From positions 248,001-312,000 of IMG/VR virus record IMGVR_UViG_3300042473_001265: DNA of 64,000 nt; one strand, 5' to 3'. The notes under the pieces were generated by a model. That model made no database searches. It had not been told where the DNA came from and worked only from the letters and a program-made list of their open reading frames with translations. The number at the start of each line of letters is the position of its first letter. Position 1 is the stretch's first letter. The position numbers and the translations under genes were made by a program. Shown one piece after another: positions 3,993 through 58,360 of the stretch.

Positions 3993-4799
3993 ATGAGTCG
4001 TAAATTCTCTGTGGTCACCACATTCAACGCATCTGGCTACAAAAAATACGGCAAAAGAATGATCGAAACATTCCTGAACACATGGCCTGCAGAAGTTGAC
4101 TTGATAGTGTATGCTGAAGATTGCACTGTCGTTGAATCTGCACCCAACTTGCGTGTGTTAGATCTGCATCGGGACAGTCCAGAACTAGTGGCATTCAAAA
4201 CAAAATGGCGCGGTGTTCCCAAGGCCAATGGTGATGTGTCTGCTGACCCCACAAGAAACAACCGCAAAGACGCTGCCAAAGGATTCAAATGGAATGCTGT
4301 ACGCTTTGCTCACAAAGTATATGCTATATTTGCTGCTGCCCATGCTGCAACTGATTGGCTGATATGGATGGATGCTGACACTGTGTGTCATAGTCCTATC
4401 TCGATGGCGCAATTACACAATTTGTGTCCCGCCGCAGCTGACATTTGTTTCTTGGGTCGCAAAGGCAAATACACCGAATGCGGGTTGTATGCTATGAATC
4501 TGCGTTCTCCGGCCACATCAAAATTTCTCAAAGAGTTTCAGCGTGTGTACGACGATGCAGACAACGGAATATTCACCATGAAAGAATGGCACGACAGTTT
4601 TGTGTTTGATGTTGTGCGTAAATCAATGACGTTGGAACAACACGATTGGAGTAGCCATTTGATTTCGGGCGAAGGCCATCCGTTGATCAACAGTGAATGG
4701 GGTGCCTATCTAGATCACTTGAAAGGTGATCGCAAGTCATTGGGTCGTAGTAAATTAAGCGATTTAAAAATTAAAAGAACAGAGGCGTATTGGCAATGA
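3993..4799 (+). CDS. GT-A fold glycosyltransferase/nucleotide-diphospho-sugar transferase-like protein
   Basis: 'RFAHKVYAI' followed by 'LIWMDADT' DxD motif; inside the glycan locus. Confidence 0.7.
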   Translation: MSRKFSVVTTFNASGYKKYGKRMIETFLNTWPAEVDLIVYAEDCTVVESAPNLRVLDLHRDSPELVAFKTKWRGVPKANGDVSADPTRNNRKDAAKGFKWNAVRFAHKVYAIFAAAHAATDWLIWMDADTVCHSPISMAQLHNLCPAAADICFLGRKGKYTECGLYAMNLRSPATSKFLKEFQRVYDDADNGIFTMKEWHDSFVFDVVRKSMTLEQHDWSSHLISGEGHPLINSEWGAYLDHLKGDRKSLGRSKLSDLKIKRTEAYWQ

Positions 4800-49302: not shown

Positions 49303-50679
49303 ATGAACAAAATAGATTTTAGCACAAAAGAATTTGAAGGGATCAAGTTGGCAGCAGACTGGATTCGAGATCTTGAAAGCAGCGACAGTAGATTACACAA
49401 AGAATCTGTGATCGAAAAAGCCTATGTGGCCTCACAACTTGGCAGCGCCAGTGCTCAATGCTTTTTGTTCAACTGCTATCAGGCCTACAACCCTTTCTAT
49501 GTGTTCGGCGTCAAACAAATACCCGAGACTACTGGACTTGAGAACCAACCCAACAACTGGCCTGTGTTCTGGGCCTTGTGTGAAGCACTGCGCACTCGTA
49601 GCTTGACCGGACACGAAGCTCGTGATCGTATTGCGGCCGTGAGCCAAGAGTTTGACAGTGCCGAATGGAACATGTTGTGTCGTCGAGTGCTGATCAAAGA
49701 CCTGCGATGCGGCATCAGTGAAAAGACCATCAACAAAGTTGTGGGCCGAACAGAATGGAAGATCCCTACCTTTACTTGTCAGCTGGCACAGGACTCCACC
49801 GACCACCCCAAGAAGATGAAGGGCATCAAACGCCTGGAAGTCAAATTGGACGGTGTGCGTGTGATTGCAGTGGTGTCGGGCAATAGCTGTGTGTTGTACA
49901 GCCGCAATGGCAAGGAGTTTGAAAACTTTCCGCAGATTGCTGAGGCTATCTTGGACAACCGTCGGGCATTCCAACACGGTCGAGGCACAGGTGGACACTT
50001 TGTGTTGGATGGTGAAATTGTAGGTGAGAATTTCCAAGCCTTGATGAAACAGGCACAACGCAAAAGCAATGCCAAAACAACTGGTATGGTTTATCACATT
50101 TTTGATATCATTCCATTGGATGCACTCAAAGAAGGCCATTGCAACTTGCAACAGCACAAACGTATAGCATGGCTAGAAAGTGCAAAAACGGTGTTGGACG
50201 AAACCGATTGTTTGCGTATCATGCCGGGTATGGATGTGAACCTGGACACTGCGGAAGGACATGATGTTATGCGCAGGTTTGCTGAAGCGTCAGTTGAGCA
50301 AGGATATGAAGGCATCATGATTAAAAATCTCGATGCTCCGTACGAATGCAAACGCAGTGATCACTGGATGAAATGGAAACCCACCATCACAGTGGATTTG
50401 ACCATTGTGGGTTTTGAAGAAGGAACTGGTCGCAATGCAGGCCGGTTGGGTGCTATAATTTACGAAGGAGTTGATAATGAACGAAATATTCGGGTTAATG
50501 TTGGTACTGGCTATAGTGATAATGATCGTGATGAGTTTTGGGCTGCCCGGGATCAGTTACTTGGTGTCATTGGCGAAATCCAAGCTGATGCAGTTACTCA
50601 AAATCAAGACGGATCATACAGTTTGAGATTCCCTAGGCATGTTCGGTTCCGTGGATTTGAAGCCGGGGAGAAACTGTAA
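49303..50679 (+). CDS. lig: ATP-dependent DNA ligase
   Basis: 'EVKLDGVR', 'YSRNGK', 'LDGEI', 'YEGIMIK', 'WMKWKP', 'SLRFPR'; start at Met29 of the ORF track. Confidence 0.95.
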   Translation: MNKIDFSTKEFEGIKLAADWIRDLESSDSRLHKESVIEKAYVASQLGSASAQCFLFNCYQAYNPFYVFGVKQIPETTGLENQPNNWPVFWALCEALRTRSLTGHEARDRIAAVSQEFDSAEWNMLCRRVLIKDLRCGISEKTINKVVGRTEWKIPTFTCQLAQDSTDHPKKMKGIKRLEVKLDGVRVIAVVSGNSCVLYSRNGKEFENFPQIAEAILDNRRAFQHGRGTGGHFVLDGEIVGENFQALMKQAQRKSNAKTTGMVYHIFDIIPLDALKEGHCNLQQHKRIAWLESAKTVLDETDCLRIMPGMDVNLDTAEGHDVMRRFAEASVEQGYEGIMIKNLDAPYECKRSDHWMKWKPTITVDLTIVGFEEGTGRNAGRLGAIIYEGVDNERNIRVNVGTGYSDNDRDEFWAARDQLLGVIGEIQADAVTQNQDGSYSLRFPRHVRFRGFEAGEKL

Positions 50680-50780
50680 TGCATTGGCTACTGGTATTGA
50701 TCTTGGCATTTGTTAACCTGCCGCTGGCCCTGGGGTTGGCAGCAATTTTTATATTTTTTGGCAAACAAACAAAAAATTAA
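50679..50780 (+). CDS. Small hydrophobic peptide (33 aa)
   Basis: TAATG-coupled to the ligase; MHWLLVLILAFVNLPLALGLAAIFIFFGKQTKN. Confidence 0.55.
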   Translation: MHWLLVLILAFVNLPLALGLAAIFIFFGKQTKN

Positions 50781-50798
50781 TCTAACAAGGAATTGAAA

Positions 50799-50972
50799 AT
50801 GGAAAAATTTATGGAATGGTTTGGTCGGCACCGTAAGACGATTGGATACACTGTCGGTGGTGTTAACTTAGGAGCTGGCATTGCCGCAATTGCCGGTGGC
50901 AGTGTTTGGCCTGGGATATTATGGTTAGTCTTGGGCGCTGCAATAATTTTAGATGCTAGGATGTTCAAATGA
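50799..50972 (+). CDS. Small membrane protein (57 aa)
   Basis: AAGGA SD; ATGA overlap with the next gene; two hydrophobic segments. Confidence 0.7.
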   Translation: MEKFMEWFGRHRKTIGYTVGGVNLGAGIAAIAGGSVWPGILWLVLGAAIILDARMFK

Positions 50973-51520
50973 TTTCAATGAAAGAATGGATGGAATTGGT
51001 CGACTATAAGATCACCGAAGGCAGTGCATACGGCTGGTCATGCTACGGTCCCGATGCTTATACACTAGATTCGTGGAACGGTGTTCAAGGCGAAGGCGGA
51101 TACAGTTTCAGCATTGTGTTCAGTACTGAATCTGCACAAACAGCGCATCAAGTGTCGGCATACGACTACACCAACAATCGTGCTTACCGAATGATCAATC
51201 CAGACTATGCAGAGCAGTATCATAACGAAGCCAAGTCTAGAAATGTGCCGGCTAATCAAGCCTGGGACAATGTTGACTATGTGGATTTGGAAGTGGCAGA
51301 CGACTTTATTCAAAAGTGCCTGGCCATTCGCGCCGGTGAGGATTATGACACACGAGTACAGATTACAGTTGACTTTTCAGATGAAGATCTGTTGAAGTAC
51401 ATGAAACTGGCACACGAGCGTGATATCACATTCAACGAATTGGTGGTGCAGGCCTTGACCGAGGCCATTCAACTCCGCGACGCGAACCCAGAAAGATTTG
51501 GTCAGTTGTACAACGATTAA
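50969..51520 (+). CDS. Hypothetical protein with C-terminal ribbon-helix-helix-like segment
   Basis: 'ITVDFSDEDLLKYMKLAHERDITFNELV'. Confidence 0.75.
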   Translation: MISMKEWMELVDYKITEGSAYGWSCYGPDAYTLDSWNGVQGEGGYSFSIVFSTESAQTAHQVSAYDYTNNRAYRMINPDYAEQYHNEAKSRNVPANQAWDNVDYVDLEVADDFIQKCLAIRAGEDYDTRVQITVDFSDEDLLKYMKLAHERDITFNELVVQALTEAIQLRDANPERFGQLYND

Positions 51521-51536
51521 GCACTTGGAATAACAT

Positions 51537-51731
51537 ATGAACAAGAAACTTGAAATTGATTTTGAAACAGCAGACCGCATCACAGTGCTCACACTGAAAG
51601 AACAGCGCAAGTATCTCAAAAAAGAACTGGCCGACTTCAAAAAAGGCGAATACCTGCATCCTGAAGATGTAAGCGGAAACACAATCATGATCCATCACTT
51701 GGATGCTGTGATCAAACATTTTGGTGGCTAA
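51537..51731 (+). CDS. Hypothetical protein
   Basis: 64 aa, tightly packed. Confidence 0.7.
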   Translation: MNKKLEIDFETADRITVLTLKEQRKYLKKELADFKKGEYLHPEDVSGNTIMIHHLDAVIKHFGG

Positions 51732-52172
51732 ATGAAAATTGGACTCAGTTACAGCCGATGTGTTCGAGACATTGCGGAAGGTCGTGTGGACATTGACGAT
51801 GTGCTGGTTATCATTGCTCGTACAGATTTTGATCCCAATGACGACGAGCAATGGGCAAACATGTGGTCGGCCTACGGCGGCGGCTCGCCTAGATTTGATT
51901 CTATTACGGGCTTTAGTCGTAGTGCTCCAGAGTGGGCTGGTCAAACTGACGAAGATCTTTTCCGTAGTGTGAGCGTAGGCTTATGGAAGTTGGGCAAGCT
52001 GCACCAGCCACGCAAATTTGGCGCAAATCCGAGTCGGCGTGGTGAATTTTGGTTGGAAGCAGTGCTGCCTGATTCTGAACTGGAATCACGCCCCGCAGTA
52101 AAAGACGCATGGGATCGGTTTCAGATGCTGGCCGGATTAACCAACACAAAGTTGGATCGAGATTATCAATGA
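51732..52172 (+). CDS. Hypothetical protein
   Basis: 146 aa. Confidence 0.75.
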   Translation: MKIGLSYSRCVRDIAEGRVDIDDVLVIIARTDFDPNDDEQWANMWSAYGGGSPRFDSITGFSRSAPEWAGQTDEDLFRSVSVGLWKLGKLHQPRKFGANPSRRGEFWLEAVLPDSELESRPAVKDAWDRFQMLAGLTNTKLDRDYQ

Positions 52173-54465: not shown

Positions 54466-56214
54466 ATGATATTCGGATACTTTACATTATTTGTTGCACT
54501 GGTCATCAGTGCAGTGGCAGAGTTCTATAGCATTATAGGCCTGACTTCTATTTTTTCCGCAGCTTTTTGGCCGGTGGTTATTATGGGTGTTGCACTTGGA
54601 GTAGGCAAAATCACAGCCGCAATTTGGTTGAAATTAAATTGGCACCGTGCCAGTATAACTTATAAACTGTATCTGGTTCCAGCACTGGTATTCCTCATGT
54701 TGTTGACCAGCATGGGCATTTTTGGCTTTTTGAGCAAGGCACACAGCGATCAAAGTCTGGTGTCGGGCGATGTTACCAGTAAGATTGCAATATATGATGA
54801 AAAAATCAAAACCGAAAAAGAGAATATTGAAGCAAACCGTAAGGCACTTAAACAGATGGATGAAGGAGTGGACCAAGTACTGGGCCGCTCAACATCAGAA
54901 ACGGGTGCCGACAAAGCTGTGGCTCTGCGTCGAGCCCAGCAGAAAGAACGTGCTCGCCTTCAAGCTGAAATATCGCAGTCGCAAAAGTCTATTGCGGAAC
55001 TTAACGATGCCCGTGCGCCTATTGCCGCTGAGGTCCGTAAAGTTGAAGCCGAGGTTGGACCAATAAAATACATTGCGGCATTTATCTATGGTGATAATCC
55101 CGACGCCAATTTGTTGGAAAAAGCAGTGACATGGGTGATTATTATTATTGTTGCAGTGTTTGATCCTCTGGCGCTGATGTTAATTCTTGCTGCTCAACAA
55201 AGTATAAAATGGAATCGTGAAGAAACGGATGAAGACGCCCACAAAAGGATTGAGCAAGAGTTAACAGAAACAATGCAGGATCTCGGCAGAGTGGCCGAGC
55301 CCAAGTATGAAGCCGACGACGGCGCGTTGACCGGCCATCAGGTTGAACAGATTAAAAAAACACTAGCACAGCAACACCCTTATCTGGACCAGCCGTTTGT
55401 GCATTTTAAAAATCTTACACCAATGGTGTATAAACCGGGTGAAACAACTACACTGCCAAAACATCCAAGCATCAATGACTTTGTACCGCAGACCACAGAG
55501 TACATCATTGAAGAAGATACTATCCCTTGTCACAAGTGCGGCACTGATTTAGTAAATGCACCGGGCATCGGGCTATTTTGCCCCAACAAGGCGTGTGATG
55601 TACTAGACGGCCCATTGTGGGATGATCAACTAGAACTTGATTTTACCCAGCCATTGCCCTCAGAGTACCGTTCTTACAAATTGTTTGTGCAACCGGAAAC
55701 AGTGGTTGAGCCAGAAGTGCAGCCACCAACAACAATTATCAGCAGCGACGACCCAATGGATGACGATGTCGAACTTAGTTCGATGGATTCTGTTGAAAAG
55801 GACGCGGCCAGACGATGGAAAGCAGCTCACCCCGGCCACACTTTGAAATTTCAACGACGACTAGTTGACATGGGAAAACTGGCACAACTTCCTTGGTTGG
55901 CAGCAGAATACAATTCTAGCTTGGTTCCAGATATTGATTTGGGCAATGAAACACAATCAGGATTTGGCATTGCGTTTCCTACTGCTCCCAACAAAGGCGA
56001 CAGCTATCTGCGTGTAGACCGACTGCCAAGTGTGCTGTACAAGTTCAATGGCCTTGGCTGGATAGAAGTAGACAAAGCTCTCAGTGACCGTTACGCACAC
56101 GACGAAGCATACATTGATTATCTCATCTCCAAGATAGACACTGGTGAGTATGATCCAGACCTGCTGAGTGATGCCGAGAGAGAACAGATTGAACAAAGAT
56201 TAACTGGAAACTAG
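54466..56214 (+). CDS. Multi-pass membrane protein with coiled coil and Zn-ribbon
   Basis: N-terminal TM helices, heptads, further TM 'WVIIIIVAVFDPLALMLILAA', 'CHKC...CPNKAC'. Confidence 0.75.
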   Translation: MIFGYFTLFVALVISAVAEFYSIIGLTSIFSAAFWPVVIMGVALGVGKITAAIWLKLNWHRASITYKLYLVPALVFLMLLTSMGIFGFLSKAHSDQSLVSGDVTSKIAIYDEKIKTEKENIEANRKALKQMDEGVDQVLGRSTSETGADKAVALRRAQQKERARLQAEISQSQKSIAELNDARAPIAAEVRKVEAEVGPIKYIAAFIYGDNPDANLLEKAVTWVIIIIVAVFDPLALMLILAAQQSIKWNREETDEDAHKRIEQELTETMQDLGRVAEPKYEADDGALTGHQVEQIKKTLAQQHPYLDQPFVHFKNLTPMVYKPGETTTLPKHPSINDFVPQTTEYIIEEDTIPCHKCGTDLVNAPGIGLFCPNKACDVLDGPLWDDQLELDFTQPLPSEYRSYKLFVQPETVVEPEVQPPTTIISSDDPMDDDVELSSMDSVEKDAARRWKAAHPGHTLKFQRRLVDMGKLAQLPWLAAEYNSSLVPDIDLGNETQSGFGIAFPTAPNKGDSYLRVDRLPSVLYKFNGLGWIEVDKALSDRYAHDEAYIDYLISKIDTGEYDPDLLSDAEREQIEQRLTGN

Positions 56215-56215
56215 A

Positions 56216-57424
56216 ATGACCATCAGATCAACACCCACGCATTGCAGTTTTTGTGACAAGCACAAGGATCAAGTCGTCAAACTGATTGTGGGGCACAATG
56301 TAGGCATATGCAACGAGTGTGTTGATTTTTGTCACGGGCTACTGATAAAAGAACAGGCCAAAACAAAAAACGTCACAGAAGAATCAATTTTAGATCCACG
56401 AGCAATACACAAATATCTTGATCAGTATGTGATTGGTCAACCAACTGCTAAAATTGTGTTGAGTGTGGCTGTGGCCAATCATTACAAGCGCATCAGTGAT
56501 ACAGGTCTAGAACAAGAAATACAAAAAGCCAATATCTTAATAACAGGACCAACCGGCACAGGCAAAACACTGATGGCCCGTACTGTGGCCAAATATTTAG
56601 ATGTTCCTTTTGTCATTGCAGATGCAACCACATTGACCGAAGCAGGTTATGTGGGTGATGATGTTGACAGTTTGATCACACGGTTATATCATGCCAGTGG
56701 AAATGATGTGGAACGCACACAGCGCGGTATTATATTCCTAGACGAAGTAGACAAAATAGCCCGCAAAAGCGAAAGCGCCACGGTAACACGGGACATATCC
56801 GGCGAGGGTGTGCAGCAAGCACTGCTCAAACTGATCGAAGGTACCAAGTGCAAAGTGGCCCAGCAAAATAGTCGCAAGGTCTCAACAGGTGAAACAGTTG
56901 ACATCGACACTACCAACATCCTGTTTATCTGTGGTGGAGCTTTTGTTGGGCTAGACAAAGTTATCAAAACCCGCACACACGGAACTGCCATTGGATTTGG
57001 TGCAAAGTTAACAGTGCCAAACAACGCCACAACAGAAGCAATCACTCCAGACGATCTAGTACGCTACGGAATGATACCGGAGTTTGTGGGAAGATTTCCC
57101 AGCATTATACAACTGGACGAGCTGACCAAACCACAACTTATTACCATTCTTACCGAAGTAAAAAACAACCTGGTTGGTCAGTACAGATGGTTGTTTAACC
57201 AAGATGGGGTAGCATTGGACTTTGATACCGACAGTTTAGATCTAATTGCTGAACGCACAATGGTCACAAAAACTGGTGCTCGTGGACTGCATACAGAACT
57301 AGAGCGTGTGTTGTTGCCGCATATGTACAACTTGAAAGATTATCAGTCACGCAATGTGCTAAAAATTGCCATTGACAAAACACAAGTCACAACGCCTCTT
57401 AAATTAGAACAACAAAATTCTTAA
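56216..57424 (+). CDS. clpX: ATP-dependent Clp protease ATP-binding subunit ClpX
   Basis: 'CSFC...CNEC..FC', 'GPTGTGKT', 'GYVG', 'FLDEVDK', 'IGFG', 'GARGL'. Confidence 0.95.
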   Translation: MTIRSTPTHCSFCDKHKDQVVKLIVGHNVGICNECVDFCHGLLIKEQAKTKNVTEESILDPRAIHKYLDQYVIGQPTAKIVLSVAVANHYKRISDTGLEQEIQKANILITGPTGTGKTLMARTVAKYLDVPFVIADATTLTEAGYVGDDVDSLITRLYHASGNDVERTQRGIIFLDEVDKIARKSESATVTRDISGEGVQQALLKLIEGTKCKVAQQNSRKVSTGETVDIDTTNILFICGGAFVGLDKVIKTRTHGTAIGFGAKLTVPNNATTEAITPDDLVRYGMIPEFVGRFPSIIQLDELTKPQLITILTEVKNNLVGQYRWLFNQDGVALDFDTDSLDLIAERTMVTKTGARGLHTELERVLLPHMYNLKDYQSRNVLKIAIDKTQVTTPLKLEQQNS

Positions 57425-57525: not shown

Positions 57526-57984
57526 ATGACAAAAACTCTCACCCTTCGCTCTTTCGACATTCCTGCAATTCACAAATTTGGCATCGGATTCGACAACATG
57601 TTTGATGATCTCATGCGTGTGAGTGCTCAACAATCTACCACAAATTATCCACCTTATGATATTGTACAAATCAACGAAGATGAGTACATGATTGCTGTGG
57701 CTGTGGCCGGATTTGGCGACGACAATCTTTCAGTGATCAAGGACAAAAAAGTTTTGGTCATTGAAGGTAAGCACAGCCGTGAAACTGTGGACAATGAAGA
57801 TTCTACTGCAAAATATCTGCACAAAGGCATCAGTGAAAGACATTTCCGCAGGGAATTTCAGTTGGCTGATCATGTGGAAATTGTCAATGCAAATCTTGAA
57901 CTGGGCATCTTGAGCATACACCTAAAGCGTGATATTCCTGAAGAAGCCAAGCCAAAGACCATTGCAATCAACTACAAAAAGTAA
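57526..57984 (+). CDS. hsp20: Small heat-shock protein (Hsp20/IbpA family)
   Basis: 'IGFDNMF', 'NYPPYDI', 'AVAGF', 'YLHKGISER.F.R.F.L', 'GILSI.L'. Confidence 0.95.
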   Translation: MTKTLTLRSFDIPAIHKFGIGFDNMFDDLMRVSAQQSTTNYPPYDIVQINEDEYMIAVAVAGFGDDNLSVIKDKKVLVIEGKHSRETVDNEDSTAKYLHKGISERHFRREFQLADHVEIVNANLELGILSIHLKRDIPEEAKPKTIAINYKK

Positions 57985-58045: not shown

Positions 58046-58360
58046 ATGACATCACCAGATATCAATACATTAATCAAATCAAAAGTAGAACTGCGTGAAC
58101 CACCAATGTTTAAGATCATCTACTTGAACGACACCAAGACATCTGTAGATTTTGTAGTTGAAAGTTTAATCACACACTTTGAATACACAGCAGACACTGC
58201 TGTCGCCATCACTGAAGATATCCATAATTCTGGATCCGCAGTGGTAGCAGTATTGCCCTACGAAATTGCTGAACAAAAAGGCATCGAAGTCACTGTGGAT
58301 GCTCGCAATCATAATTTTCCATTGCAGATCAAGCTGGAACCTGAAACAGTTGTGCATTGA
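58046..58360 (+). CDS. clpS: ClpS N-degron adaptor-like protein
   Basis: 'PPMFKIIYLND..T..DFV', 'IHNSG.AVV...YEIAE', 'FPL'; AAGGA SD before ATG 58046. Confidence 0.9.
   Translation: MTSPDINTLIKSKVELREPPMFKIIYLNDTKTSVDFVVESLITHFEYTADTAVAITEDIHNSGSAVVAVLPYEIAEQKGIEVTVDARNHNFPLQIKLEPETVVH

What the first reader, a model, noticed from the sequence alone, without database searches (positions are those of the whole stretch)
56216..57424. Phage ClpX keeps the ClpP-docking IGF loop but has a rewritten RKH loop
GYVG pore-1, RD(I)SGEGVQ pore-2, the Zn domain and IGF are intact, but the canonical 'GGRKHP' is 'NSRKVS'. The RKH loop is an established substrate-specificity determinant. No clpP is in the window, so the phage unfoldase could hijack host ClpP to degrade a new substrate set (defence proteins, regulators) or remodel phage complexes.
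Basis: partly seen in the sequence, partly recalled or inferred. Interest (0 to 1): 0.6.

Follow-up and report, generated by a model that had tools for sequence, protein, structure and literature searches.

The report
Jumbo-phage ClpX with histidine-less RKH loop
This is a genuine ClpX unfoldase gene of a 340-kb lake-water phage that has lost the histidine bacteria use to recognise ssrA-tagged proteins, but the phage carries its own ClpP, ClpA, ClpS and tmRNA, so it need not borrow the host's protease.

Summary
The zinc finger, Walker motifs, GYVG, pore-2 (RDISGEGVQ) and IGF are intact. 'NSRKVS' stands where E. coli has 'GGRKHP'.

The change is a lineage trait, not chance. None of the 121 closest proteins (65-96% identical) has RKH, though all keep a basic pair (R/K-K/R). 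In contrast, 78 of 79 sampled bacterial ClpX keep PPQGGRKHP. The third loop position takes 11 different residues. The loop's pN/pS is 0.44 against 0.14 for the core, so constraint is relaxed; positive selection is not shown.

The window lacks clpP, but the same 340,172-bp genome has:
- a true ClpP and a second, divergent ClpP-like gene about 16-18 kb past the window end;
- a ClpA-like ATPase with its own IGF tripeptide;
- ClpS and an IbpA-like sHSP directly after clpX;
- a two-piece tmRNA whose 29-residue tag ends -LAV.

The likeliest reading is a phage-borne ClpXP. Its ClpX probably still unfolds proteins but recognises canonical -AA ssrA tags poorly, like mitochondrial ClpX with RKL. Substrates are unknown. 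Co-variation between loop and tag was not supported. Clp genes in jumbo phages are already known, so interest is moderate.

The parts
56216..57424 (+). clpX coding sequence, 402 aa
   Evidence: ORF list. NCBIfam ClpX equivalogs above cut-off. Best solved relatives are bacterial ClpX, E 7e-119.
56240..56344 (+). N-terminal C4 zinc-binding domain (Cys10, Cys13, Cys32, Cys35)
   Evidence: PF06689 at 47.7 bits against cut-off 27. The four Cys are invariant in alignment A1. Translation checked.
56546..56569 (+). Walker A motif, GPTGTGKT
   Evidence: Alignment to E. coli ClpX. Invariant columns in A1. Translation.
56645..56656 (+). Pore-1 loop, GYVG
   Evidence: GYVG is present in all 121 clade members.
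56735..56755 (+). Walker B region, FLDEVDK
56789..56815 (+). Pore-2 loop, RDISGEGVQ, with Ile at the E. coli Val202 position. The Thr199 equivalent just upstream is kept.
   Evidence: 76 of 79 bacteria have ITRDVSGEGVQ. Most clade members have [SA]RDVSGEGVQ.
56867..56884 (+). RKH-loop tip, NSRKVS, where E. coli has GGRKHP. Arg-Lys is kept and His is replaced by Val.
   Evidence: Alignment. Clade and bacterial tallies. Entropy. pN/pS. Translation.
56990..56998 (+). IGF tripeptide of the ClpP-docking loop
   Evidence: [IM]GF is present in all 121 clade members.
57080..57097 (+). EFVGRF, holding the arginine finger (E. coli Arg307 equivalent)
57275..57289 (+). GARGL, sensor-2 arginine (E. coli Arg370 equivalent)
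57526..57984 (+). IbpA-like small heat-shock protein, 152 aa. Conserved downstream neighbour of clpX.
   Evidence: PF00011 at 60.6 bits. IbpA model at 126 bits, below its equivalog cut-off. phrog_432 Hsp20. Synteny.
58046..58360 (+). ClpS adaptor homologue, 104 aa from the ATG (a GTG at 57929 would give 143 aa). Conserved neighbour.
   Evidence: PF02617 at 74.6 bits against cut-off 23. Synteny.
54466..56214 (+). 582-aa ORF of unknown function whose stop lies 1 nt before the clpX start. Always upstream of clpX in relatives. It is probably co-transcribed; a functional link is not shown.
   Evidence: ORF list. No Pfam or PHROG match. Synteny.

Best explanation
The gene encodes the ClpX ATPase of a Clp proteolysis kit that the phage carries itself.

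Shown:
- It is a full-length ClpX with every catalytic, translocation and ClpP-docking motif.
- The same 340-kb lake-water phage genome also encodes a bona fide ClpP, a second divergent ClpP-like protein, a ClpA-like ATPase with its own IGF tripeptide, ClpS, an IbpA-like sHSP and a two-piece tmRNA.
- The ClpX-sHSP-ClpS module and ClpP are conserved in related huge phages.

Inferred:
- ClpX hexamers dock through their IGF loops onto the phage's own ClpP and degrade selected proteins during infection.
- The axial entrance keeps the basic Arg-Lys pair, which gives electrostatic grip and unfolding support.
- It has lost the His that helps bacterial ClpX bind the Ala-Ala-COO- end of the ssrA degron. 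This ClpX should therefore unfold and translocate normally but bind canonical ssrA tags weakly, much like mitochondrial ClpX with RKL.
- In this phage lineage the third loop position and its flanks vary freely, while the loop is almost frozen in bacteria. That fits released constraint from a narrower or different client set better than tuning to one new target.

What the clients are is unknown. Candidates are phage or host proteins, or proteins carrying the lineage's own [LF]AV-ending tmRNA tag.
For: Identity as ClpX.

Own ClpP:
- PF00574 hits at G000:C1:329912-330457 (262.8 bits) and 327686-328213 (95.2 bits).
- The 196-aa protein passes NF001368 (309 bits against 249).
- It aligns along its whole length with bacterial ClpP, including the N-terminal axial loop [23 protein letters not shown] and the Ser/His/Asp motifs.

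Other Clp parts:
- ClpA-like, 757 aa: TIGR02639 784 bits over 4-732 of 734, with IGF at residues 607-609.
- ClpS and sHSP.

Co-occurrence:
- ClpP is present in 4 of 5 relatives at least 90% complete.
- The module synteny holds down to 46% ClpX identity.
- [IM]GF is present in 121 of 121 clade members.

Loop:
- RKH in 78 of 79 bacteria against 0 of 121 in the clade.
- Position 222 has entropy 2.44 bits with 11 residue types, and ranks 40th of 402.
- Loop pN/pS is 0.44 against 0.14 for the core.
- At least 6 His/non-His changes on the tree, all among viral rows.
- 2 of the 8 differences from a 98%-identical relative lie at the loop tip.

Functional meaning of His230 and RKL: PMC7652416 and bioRxiv 10.64898/2026.07.31.739446.

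The sequence is real and widespread in lake-water metagenomes.
Against: - No experiment or structure shows that this ClpX binds the phage ClpP. The one complex prediction gave no answer, which is no evidence either way.
- clpX and clpP are about 25 kb apart, not in an operon as in bacteria.
- The host is unknown, so pairing with host ClpP cannot be excluded.
- The predicted loss of ssrA recognition is extrapolated from E. coli mutants and human ClpX. This ClpX keeps Thr199, Tyr-Val of pore-1 and Arg-Lys.
- A tag ending Leu-Ala-Val is still a hydrophobic C-terminal degron of the ssrA/MuA type (my own knowledge of C-motif-1 degrons), so recognition may persist.
- Synonymous sites are near saturation in most pairs, so the pN/pS contrast is only rough.
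Confidence: 0.6

Rival explanations
1. One reading: the phage ClpX docks onto the host's ClpP and redirects it to new substrates such as defence proteins or regulators.
For: The IGF loop is intact. ClpP docking pockets are broadly conserved, and the phage ClpP itself closely resembles bacterial ClpP, so cross-pairing is physically plausible. The altered RKH loop would change substrate choice.
Against: The premise fails at genome level. The phage has its own ClpP and ClpP-like genes, and these co-occur with this ClpX in relatives. No host is identified and no substrate evidence exists. The loop tip varies among close relatives instead of being fixed on one new motif.
Confidence: 0.15
2. Neutral drift: the loop change has no adaptive meaning. 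The phage ClpX serves a few clients through its N-domain or adaptors, so the RKH tip is simply unconstrained beyond the basic pair.
For: 11 residue types at position 3, with R/K-K/R conserved. pN/pS is 0.44, raised but below 1. His was lost repeatedly. No clean link between loop state and tmRNA tag end.
Against: This overlaps largely with the best explanation and differs only in denying any specificity consequence. Loss of His has strong kinetic effects in E. coli, so some change of substrate preference is hard to avoid.
Confidence: 0.2
3. ClpP-independent chaperone: the phage ClpX works alone to remodel or unfold proteins for replication or virion assembly, as ClpX does for MuA. The 196-aa ClpP serves ClpA or capsid maturation.
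For: Comparative work has proposed assembly or translocase roles for jumbo-phage ClpX and ClpA (PMC7824862). Phage G ClpX and ClpP were detected in the virion proteome (PMC12484599). PHROGs files the ClpP under head-maturation protease families.
Against: Strict conservation of [IM]GF in all 121 clade members is hard to explain without ClpP docking. The ClpP has the bacterial-type N-terminal axial loop and passes the ClpP subfamily cut-off, while it scores below the head-maturation model's cut-off (94 against 120).
Confidence: 0.1

Closest known systems
Bacterial ClpX (E. coli ClpX, PDB 8e91/6wr2; NCBIfam PRK05342 / TIGR00382)
   Same: Same domain order: C4 zinc finger followed by an AAA+ large and small domain. 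Walker A/B, arginine finger, sensor-2, GYVG, pore-2 RD(V/I)SGEGVQ and the IGF loop are all present. It aligns over residues 9-390 and scores above the equivalog cut-offs.
   Different: Only about 50-53% identical to any bacterial ClpX sampled. The near-invariant bacterial PPQGGRKHP is replaced by AQQNSRKVS. It has Ile at the Val202 position. It is encoded by a phage, far from clpP, and followed by sHSP and ClpS genes instead of lying in a clpP-clpX operon.
Human mitochondrial CLPX (RKL in place of RKH)
   Same: Keeps Arg-Lys but has an aliphatic residue instead of His at the third loop position. In human ClpX this goes with no ssrA recognition, and an RKL swap into two of six bacterial loops raises KM without much loss of Vmax.
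   Different: Human ClpX also has Leu at the Thr199 position, whereas the phage protein keeps Thr there. The phage protein is much closer in sequence to bacterial ClpX (400 bits against 284 bits).
ClpX/ClpP/ClpA/ClpS genes of other jumbo phages (Bacillus phage G gp257-258, Agrobacterium phage Atu_ph07, Sinorhizobium phages, Lak phages)
   Same: Huge phages are already known to carry ClpX, ClpP, ClpA or ClpS, Hsp20 and tmRNA genes (PMC7824862; PMC12484599; PMC11242549). These ClpX are 45-51% identical to this one.
   Different: This lineage combines all of these parts in one genome. Its ClpX clade has lost the RKH histidine throughout. No paper found in the library searches describes RKH-loop variation in phage ClpX.
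Phage-encoded two-piece tmRNAs of aquatic phages (e.g. Methylophage Melnitz)
   Same: A permuted tmRNA in an aquatic phage next to a tRNA cluster. Such tmRNAs were reported mostly from marine and aquatic phages (PMC9004378).
   Different: Here the tag is unusually long (28-29 residues) and ends [LF]AV rather than AA. It also coexists with phage ClpX, ClpA and ClpP.

Membership tests
ClpX (ATP-dependent Clp protease ATP-binding subunit) | Whole-protein score above the curated equivalog cut-offs | tested here: met
   PRK05342 at 509.1 bits (cut-off 359). TIGR00382 at 475.3 bits (cut-off 370.75).
ClpX (ATP-dependent Clp protease ATP-binding subunit) | N-terminal C4 zinc-binding domain | tested here: met
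   PF06689 at 47.7 bits (cut-off 27) over residues 9-43. Cys10/13/32/35 are invariant in A1.
ClpX (ATP-dependent Clp protease ATP-binding subunit) | Single AAA+ module with Walker A, Walker B, arginine finger and sensor-2 | tested here: met
   GPTGTGKT, FLDEVDK, EFVGRF and GARGL aligned to E. coli ClpX.
ClpX (ATP-dependent Clp protease ATP-binding subunit) | Pore-1 GYVG and pore-2 RDVSGEGVQ translocation loops | tested here: met
   GYVG is exact. Pore-2 is RDISGEGVQ with one conservative Val-to-Ile change.
ClpX (ATP-dependent Clp protease ATP-binding subunit) | IGF loop for docking on ClpP | tested here: met
   GTAIGFGA aligned to E. coli GSGIGFGA. [IM]GF is present in 121 of 121 clade members.
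ClpX (ATP-dependent Clp protease ATP-binding subunit) | Bacterial-type RKH loop (GGRKHP). This is a signature of bacterial ClpX that recognise ssrA, not a requirement of the family models. | tested here: not met
   NSRKVS in the query. 0 of 121 in the clade against 78 of 79 bacteria. Mitochondrial ClpX also lacks it, so this does not bar membership.
ClpX (ATP-dependent Clp protease ATP-binding subunit) | ATP-dependent unfolding and delivery of substrates to ClpP | not testable with these tools
   Needs biochemistry. The complex prediction gave no answer.
ClpP (partner encoded elsewhere in the same genome, G000:C1:329873-330463) | Score above the ClpP subfamily cut-off, Ser-His-Asp triad and N-terminal axial loop | tested here: met
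   NF001368 at 309.3 bits (cut-off 249). TIGR00493 at 293.9 bits is just under its equivalog cut-off of 308.6. Full-length alignment to bacterial ClpP shows the GQACSMG, MIHQP and DRD motifs and the N-terminal loop.
Permuted (two-piece) tmRNA (same genome, G000:C1:111362-111767) | Covariance-model score above Rfam's gathering score, plus a tag reading frame | tested here: met
   RF04321 at 89.4 bits (gathering 47). ARAGORN calls a permuted tmRNA with tag ANANTGEVTVSGKNVKFSARTAQRHSLAV.

The most novel reading that the evidence does not exclude
The phage lineage may run a private tag-and-destroy circuit. Its own two-piece tmRNA appends an unusually long tag ending [LF]-Ala-Val. Its own ClpX, with a histidine-less RKH loop and altered pore-2 contacts, would read that tag in preference to the host's -Ala-Ala ssrA tag and feed the tagged proteins to the phage ClpP. 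Phage-directed proteolysis would then be uncoupled from host quality control.

The evidence does not exclude this. Tags in the query's lineage keep the [LF]AV end while the rest of the tag diverges. The ClpX clade lacks His throughout.

Co-variation is not supported. A relative with RKN appears to have a -LAA tag and relatives with KKH have -MVA. The phage ClpA-like protein or host proteases could equally well be the tag reader.
Probability: 0.12. Interest if true: 0.75.

Novelty: new variant of a known kind. Interest (0 to 1): 0.4.

Why it matters
The RKH loop is the best-studied specificity element of ClpX, and in the bacteria sampled here it is almost invariant. This abundant freshwater jumbo-phage lineage keeps the motor, the ClpP-docking loop and the basic Arg-Lys pair, but lets the histidine position vary over 11 residue types. 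That is a ready-made natural mutant series for asking what the loop tip contributes to degron choice as opposed to unfolding.

The genome also shows that some huge phages import a nearly complete Clp system (ClpX, ClpA, ClpS, ClpP) together with a tmRNA, rather than only tapping host proteases. Knowing its clients would show how such phages manage protein turnover during infection.

Tried and rejected
1. Near-identical DNA in the GenBank phage collection: none found. The tblastn best hits are only 42-51% identical, so no cultured relative gives a host.

2. Complex prediction of ClpX(60-402) with two ClpP copies: 'no answer', score 0.24 against a mark of 0.34. It is not used as evidence either way.

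3. Co-variation between the RKH-loop state and the tmRNA tag C-terminus: rejected as a rule, on few genomes.
- RKV and RKT genomes have -LAV tags.
- KKH genomes have -MVA tags.
- The RKN genome appears to have -LAA. ARAGORN made no call there, so this tag was read by eye and by translation.
- Distant ClpX-like genes without RK go with -AAA and -KAA tags.

4. Positive selection on the loop: pN/pS is 0.44, higher than the core's 0.14 but below 1, with synonymous sites near saturation. It is not demonstrated.

5. Expression: two lake metatranscriptome runs hold contigs 90-95% alike over parts of clpX, the sHSP gene and clpS. These are relatives' contigs in RNA libraries and do not show transcription of this gene.

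6. Searches of the genome for SmpB, SspB, Hsp70 and Cpn60: no matches. The kit is Clp-centred, and trans-translation must use host SmpB.

7. The idea that the 196-aa ClpP is merely a head-maturation protease, as PHROGs labels suggest: rejected. It passes the ClpP subfamily cut-off, stays below the head-maturation cut-off, and has the bacterial N-terminal loop.

8. Host identification was not achieved. The nearest bacterial ClpX are gamma- and betaproteobacterial at about 50% identity, and the phage ClpX lineage branches apart from them (SH-aLRT 82).

Full report
**What is at the coordinates.** window:56216-57424 (+) is an open frame of 402 aa.
- It matches the NCBIfam ClpX equivalogs PRK05342 (509.1 bits, cut-off 359) and TIGR00382 (475.3 bits, cut-off 370.75).
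- It matches Pfam zf-C4_ClpX, AAA_2 and ClpB_D2-small.
- Its best solved relatives are bacterial ClpX: E. coli 8e91 at E 7e-119, aligned over residues 9-390.
I checked the window coordinates by translation.
- It also shows E. coli 'VPPQGGRKHPQQEF' against 'VAQQNSRKVSTGET'.

An independent lake-water metagenome contig covers 54999-57525 without a single difference, which rules out an assembly error.

**Is the loop change more than chance?** Yes, and it is a trait of a whole lineage.
- A scan of species-representative bacterial genomes returned 80 ClpX loci, mainly Gamma- and Betaproteobacteria, 49-53% identical.
- Of 79 extracted proteins, 78 carry RKH, 53 share the identical 15-residue stretch VPPQGGRKHPQQEFL, and 76 carry ITRDVSGEGVQ.
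- The 120 closest protein clusters in the metagenome protein collection are 65-96% identical.
- None of these 120 clusters, nor the query, has RKH. The tripeptide is RKS 53, RKT 19, RKI 9, RKA 8, RRT 8, RKV 4, RKN 4, RKQ 4, RKM 3, and others.
- All keep a basic pair (R/K-K/R), GYVG and [IM]GF.
- Position 222 has 2.44 bits of entropy with 11 residue types. The loop tip is the most variable stretch of the AAA+ body outside the linker-like segments at 94-100 and beside the IGF loop.
- A relative that is 98% identical differs at eight residues, and two of these are V222A and S223P.
- Nei-Gojobori counts on eight related genes give pN/pS 0.44 for codons 215-226 against 0.14 for the rest of the AAA+ module.

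The pN/pS result means relaxed constraint. Positive selection is not shown, and synonymous sites are close to saturation.

On a maximum-likelihood tree of 73 ClpX, the phage lineage groups apart from the bacteria (SH-aLRT 82). The His/non-His state changes at least six times, always among viral rows. Outlying phage branches still have RKH or KKH.

**What the loop change should do.** This part is inference from published work.
- In the E. coli recognition complex the ssrA degron is held by Tyr153/Val154, Thr199/Val202 and Arg228/His230.
- H230A raises KM for GFP-ssrA from 1.3 to roughly 140-240 uM (PMC7652416).
- Human mitochondrial ClpX has RKL and does not recognise ssrA. Replacing two of six bacterial loops with RKL raises KM but hardly lowers Vmax.
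- The positive charge of the loops supports unfolding (bioRxiv 10.64898/2026.07.31.739446).

The phage protein keeps Arg-Lys, Thr199 and pore-1. It has Val for His230 and Ile for Val202. In the wider clade the Thr199 position is Ser in 78 members, Ala in 29 and Thr in 13. I therefore expect a competent unfoldase with weak, or different, recognition of -Ala-Ala tags.

**The genome context changes the interpretation.** The window is G000:C1:248001-312000 of a 340,172-bp virus record estimated 98% complete. Outside the window the genome has the following.
- A 196-aa ClpP at C1:329873-330463. PF00574 scores 262.8 bits and NF001368 scores 309 bits against a cut-off of 249. It aligns full-length to bacterial ClpP, including the N-terminal axial loop and the Ser/His/Asp motifs.
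- A divergent 191-aa ClpP-like protein at 327656-328231. It is 25% identical to the ClpP over 143 aligned residues, and its catalytic residues align.
- A 757-aa ClpA-like ATPase at 49656-51929. TIGR02639 scores 784 bits over nearly the whole model, below the equivalog cut-off. It has its own IGF tripeptide.

Inside the window, clpX is followed on the same strand by an IbpA-like sHSP gene and a clpS gene.
- The order 582-aa ORF, clpX, (variable insert), sHSP, clpS is kept in related viral contigs down to 46% ClpX identity.
- ClpP is found in four of the five relatives that are at least 90% complete.
- There is no SmpB, SspB, Hsp70 or Cpn60.

So 'no clpP, hence host ClpP is hijacked' does not follow. 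The parsimonious partner is the phage's own ClpP. I could not confirm binding, because the complex prediction gave no answer. Cross-pairing with host ClpP is not excluded.

**The tmRNA.** At G000:C1:111362-111767, after a cluster of 30 tRNA genes, lies a permuted two-piece tmRNA.
- ARAGORN calls it, and Rfam RF04321 scores 89.4 bits against a gathering score of 47.
- Its tag is ANANTGEVTVSGKNVKFSARTAQRHSLAV.
- All five relatives that are at least 90% complete also have a match to the permuted-tmRNA model, four of them above its gathering score.
- Nineteen contigs carry a related tag-coding stretch. The 12 with a called tmRNA all have 27-29-residue tags ending [LF]AV, while other tag positions diverge.

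The RKH loop and pore-2 read the tag's C-terminus in E. coli, so I tested whether loop and tag co-vary. They do not do so cleanly.
- RKV and RKT genomes have -LAV.
- KKH genomes have -MVA.
- The RKN genome appears to have -LAA. That tag was read by translation because ARAGORN made no call.
- Two distant ClpX-like genes without RK go with -AAA and -KAA.

The idea of a private tag/reader pair is therefore kept only as a low-probability novel reading.

**Habitat and expression.** The stretch is held almost completely by many lake-water metagenomes. Two lake metatranscriptome runs contain contigs 90-95% alike over parts of clpX, the sHSP gene and clpS. This shows that relatives are present in RNA libraries but does not prove transcription.

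**Comparison with what is known.**
- Jumbo phages with ClpX, ClpA, ClpP or ClpS have been catalogued (PMC7824862).
- Phage G has adjacent ClpP-ClpX genes detected in its virion proteome, and a tmRNA whose tag ends -QVA (PMC12484599).
- Sinorhizobium phage AP-J-162 has six Clp ORFs, Hsp20 and a tmRNA (PMC11242549).
- Two-piece tmRNAs are typical of aquatic phages (PMC9004378).
- None of the library searches turned up a description of RKH-loop loss in phage ClpX. That is absence within one library, not proof of novelty.

**Verdict.**
- The protein is a member of the ClpX family. All defining features that could be tested are met.
- The bacterial RKH signature is not met, but it is not family-defining, since mitochondrial ClpX lacks it too.
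- The finding is a new variant of a known kind: a phage-borne ClpXP whose specificity loop has been released from the bacterial constraint.
- Interest is moderate at 0.4. It offers a natural mutant series at a well-studied specificity element and a nearly complete phage Clp system.

Noticed in passing
window:57526-57984 (+) and window:58046-58360 (+): An IbpA-like small heat-shock protein gene and a ClpS adaptor gene directly follow clpX. The clpX-sHSP-clpS order is conserved in related viral contigs down to 46% ClpX identity, sometimes with a 2-3 kb insert after clpX.
   Followed up: partly
window:54466-56214 (+): A 582-aa ORF with N-terminal membrane segments, a coiled-coil-like middle and a CxxC...CxxxxC stretch. 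Its stop lies 1 nt before the clpX start. It has no Pfam or PHROG match but is always upstream of clpX in relatives.
   Followed up: partly
G000:C1:111362-111767 (outside the window; L059:11362-11767): A permuted two-piece tmRNA after a cluster of 30 tRNA genes. Its 29-residue tag ends -SLAV. The 12 related tmRNAs called by ARAGORN have 27-29-residue tags that all end [LF]AV. No SmpB gene is present in the genome.
   Followed up: yes
G000:C1:49656-51929 (outside the window; L068:88-2361): A ClpA-like double-AAA+ protein of 757 aa (TIGR02639 784 bits, below the equivalog cut-off) with an IGF tripeptide at residues 607-609. Together with ClpS it suggests a phage ClpAPS branch as well.
   Followed up: partly
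G000:C1:327656-328231 (outside the window; L002:1471-2046): A second, divergent ClpP-like protein of 191 aa, 25% identical to the phage ClpP over 143 aligned residues, with aligned Ser/His/Asp. It could be a ClpP2-type partner or a capsid maturation protease. A copy is also present in the 347-kb relative G001.
   Followed up: partly
window:53591-54049 (+): A 152-aa ORF matching the C-terminal domain of malonyl-CoA decarboxylase (PF05292, 34.5 bits against cut-off 23.2). It is conserved next to the module in close relatives.
   Followed up: no
window:58368-59156 (-): A calcineurin-like metallophosphoesterase gene on the opposite strand, converging on clpS. It is conserved in relatives.
   Followed up: no
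window:57425-57525: The clpX-sHSP spacer holds TTGACA, 17 nt, then TATAAA. This is promoter-like but was not listed by the scan because it lacks the final T, so the sHSP gene may have its own promoter.
   Followed up: no
L051 and L052 (viral contigs of 129 and 407 kb), match at 4001-4792: Distant ClpX-like AAA+ modules sit inside 777-aa open frames (N-terminal extension of about 480 residues), with KAG in place of RKH. The complete 407-kb genome has no ClpP match.
   Followed up: no
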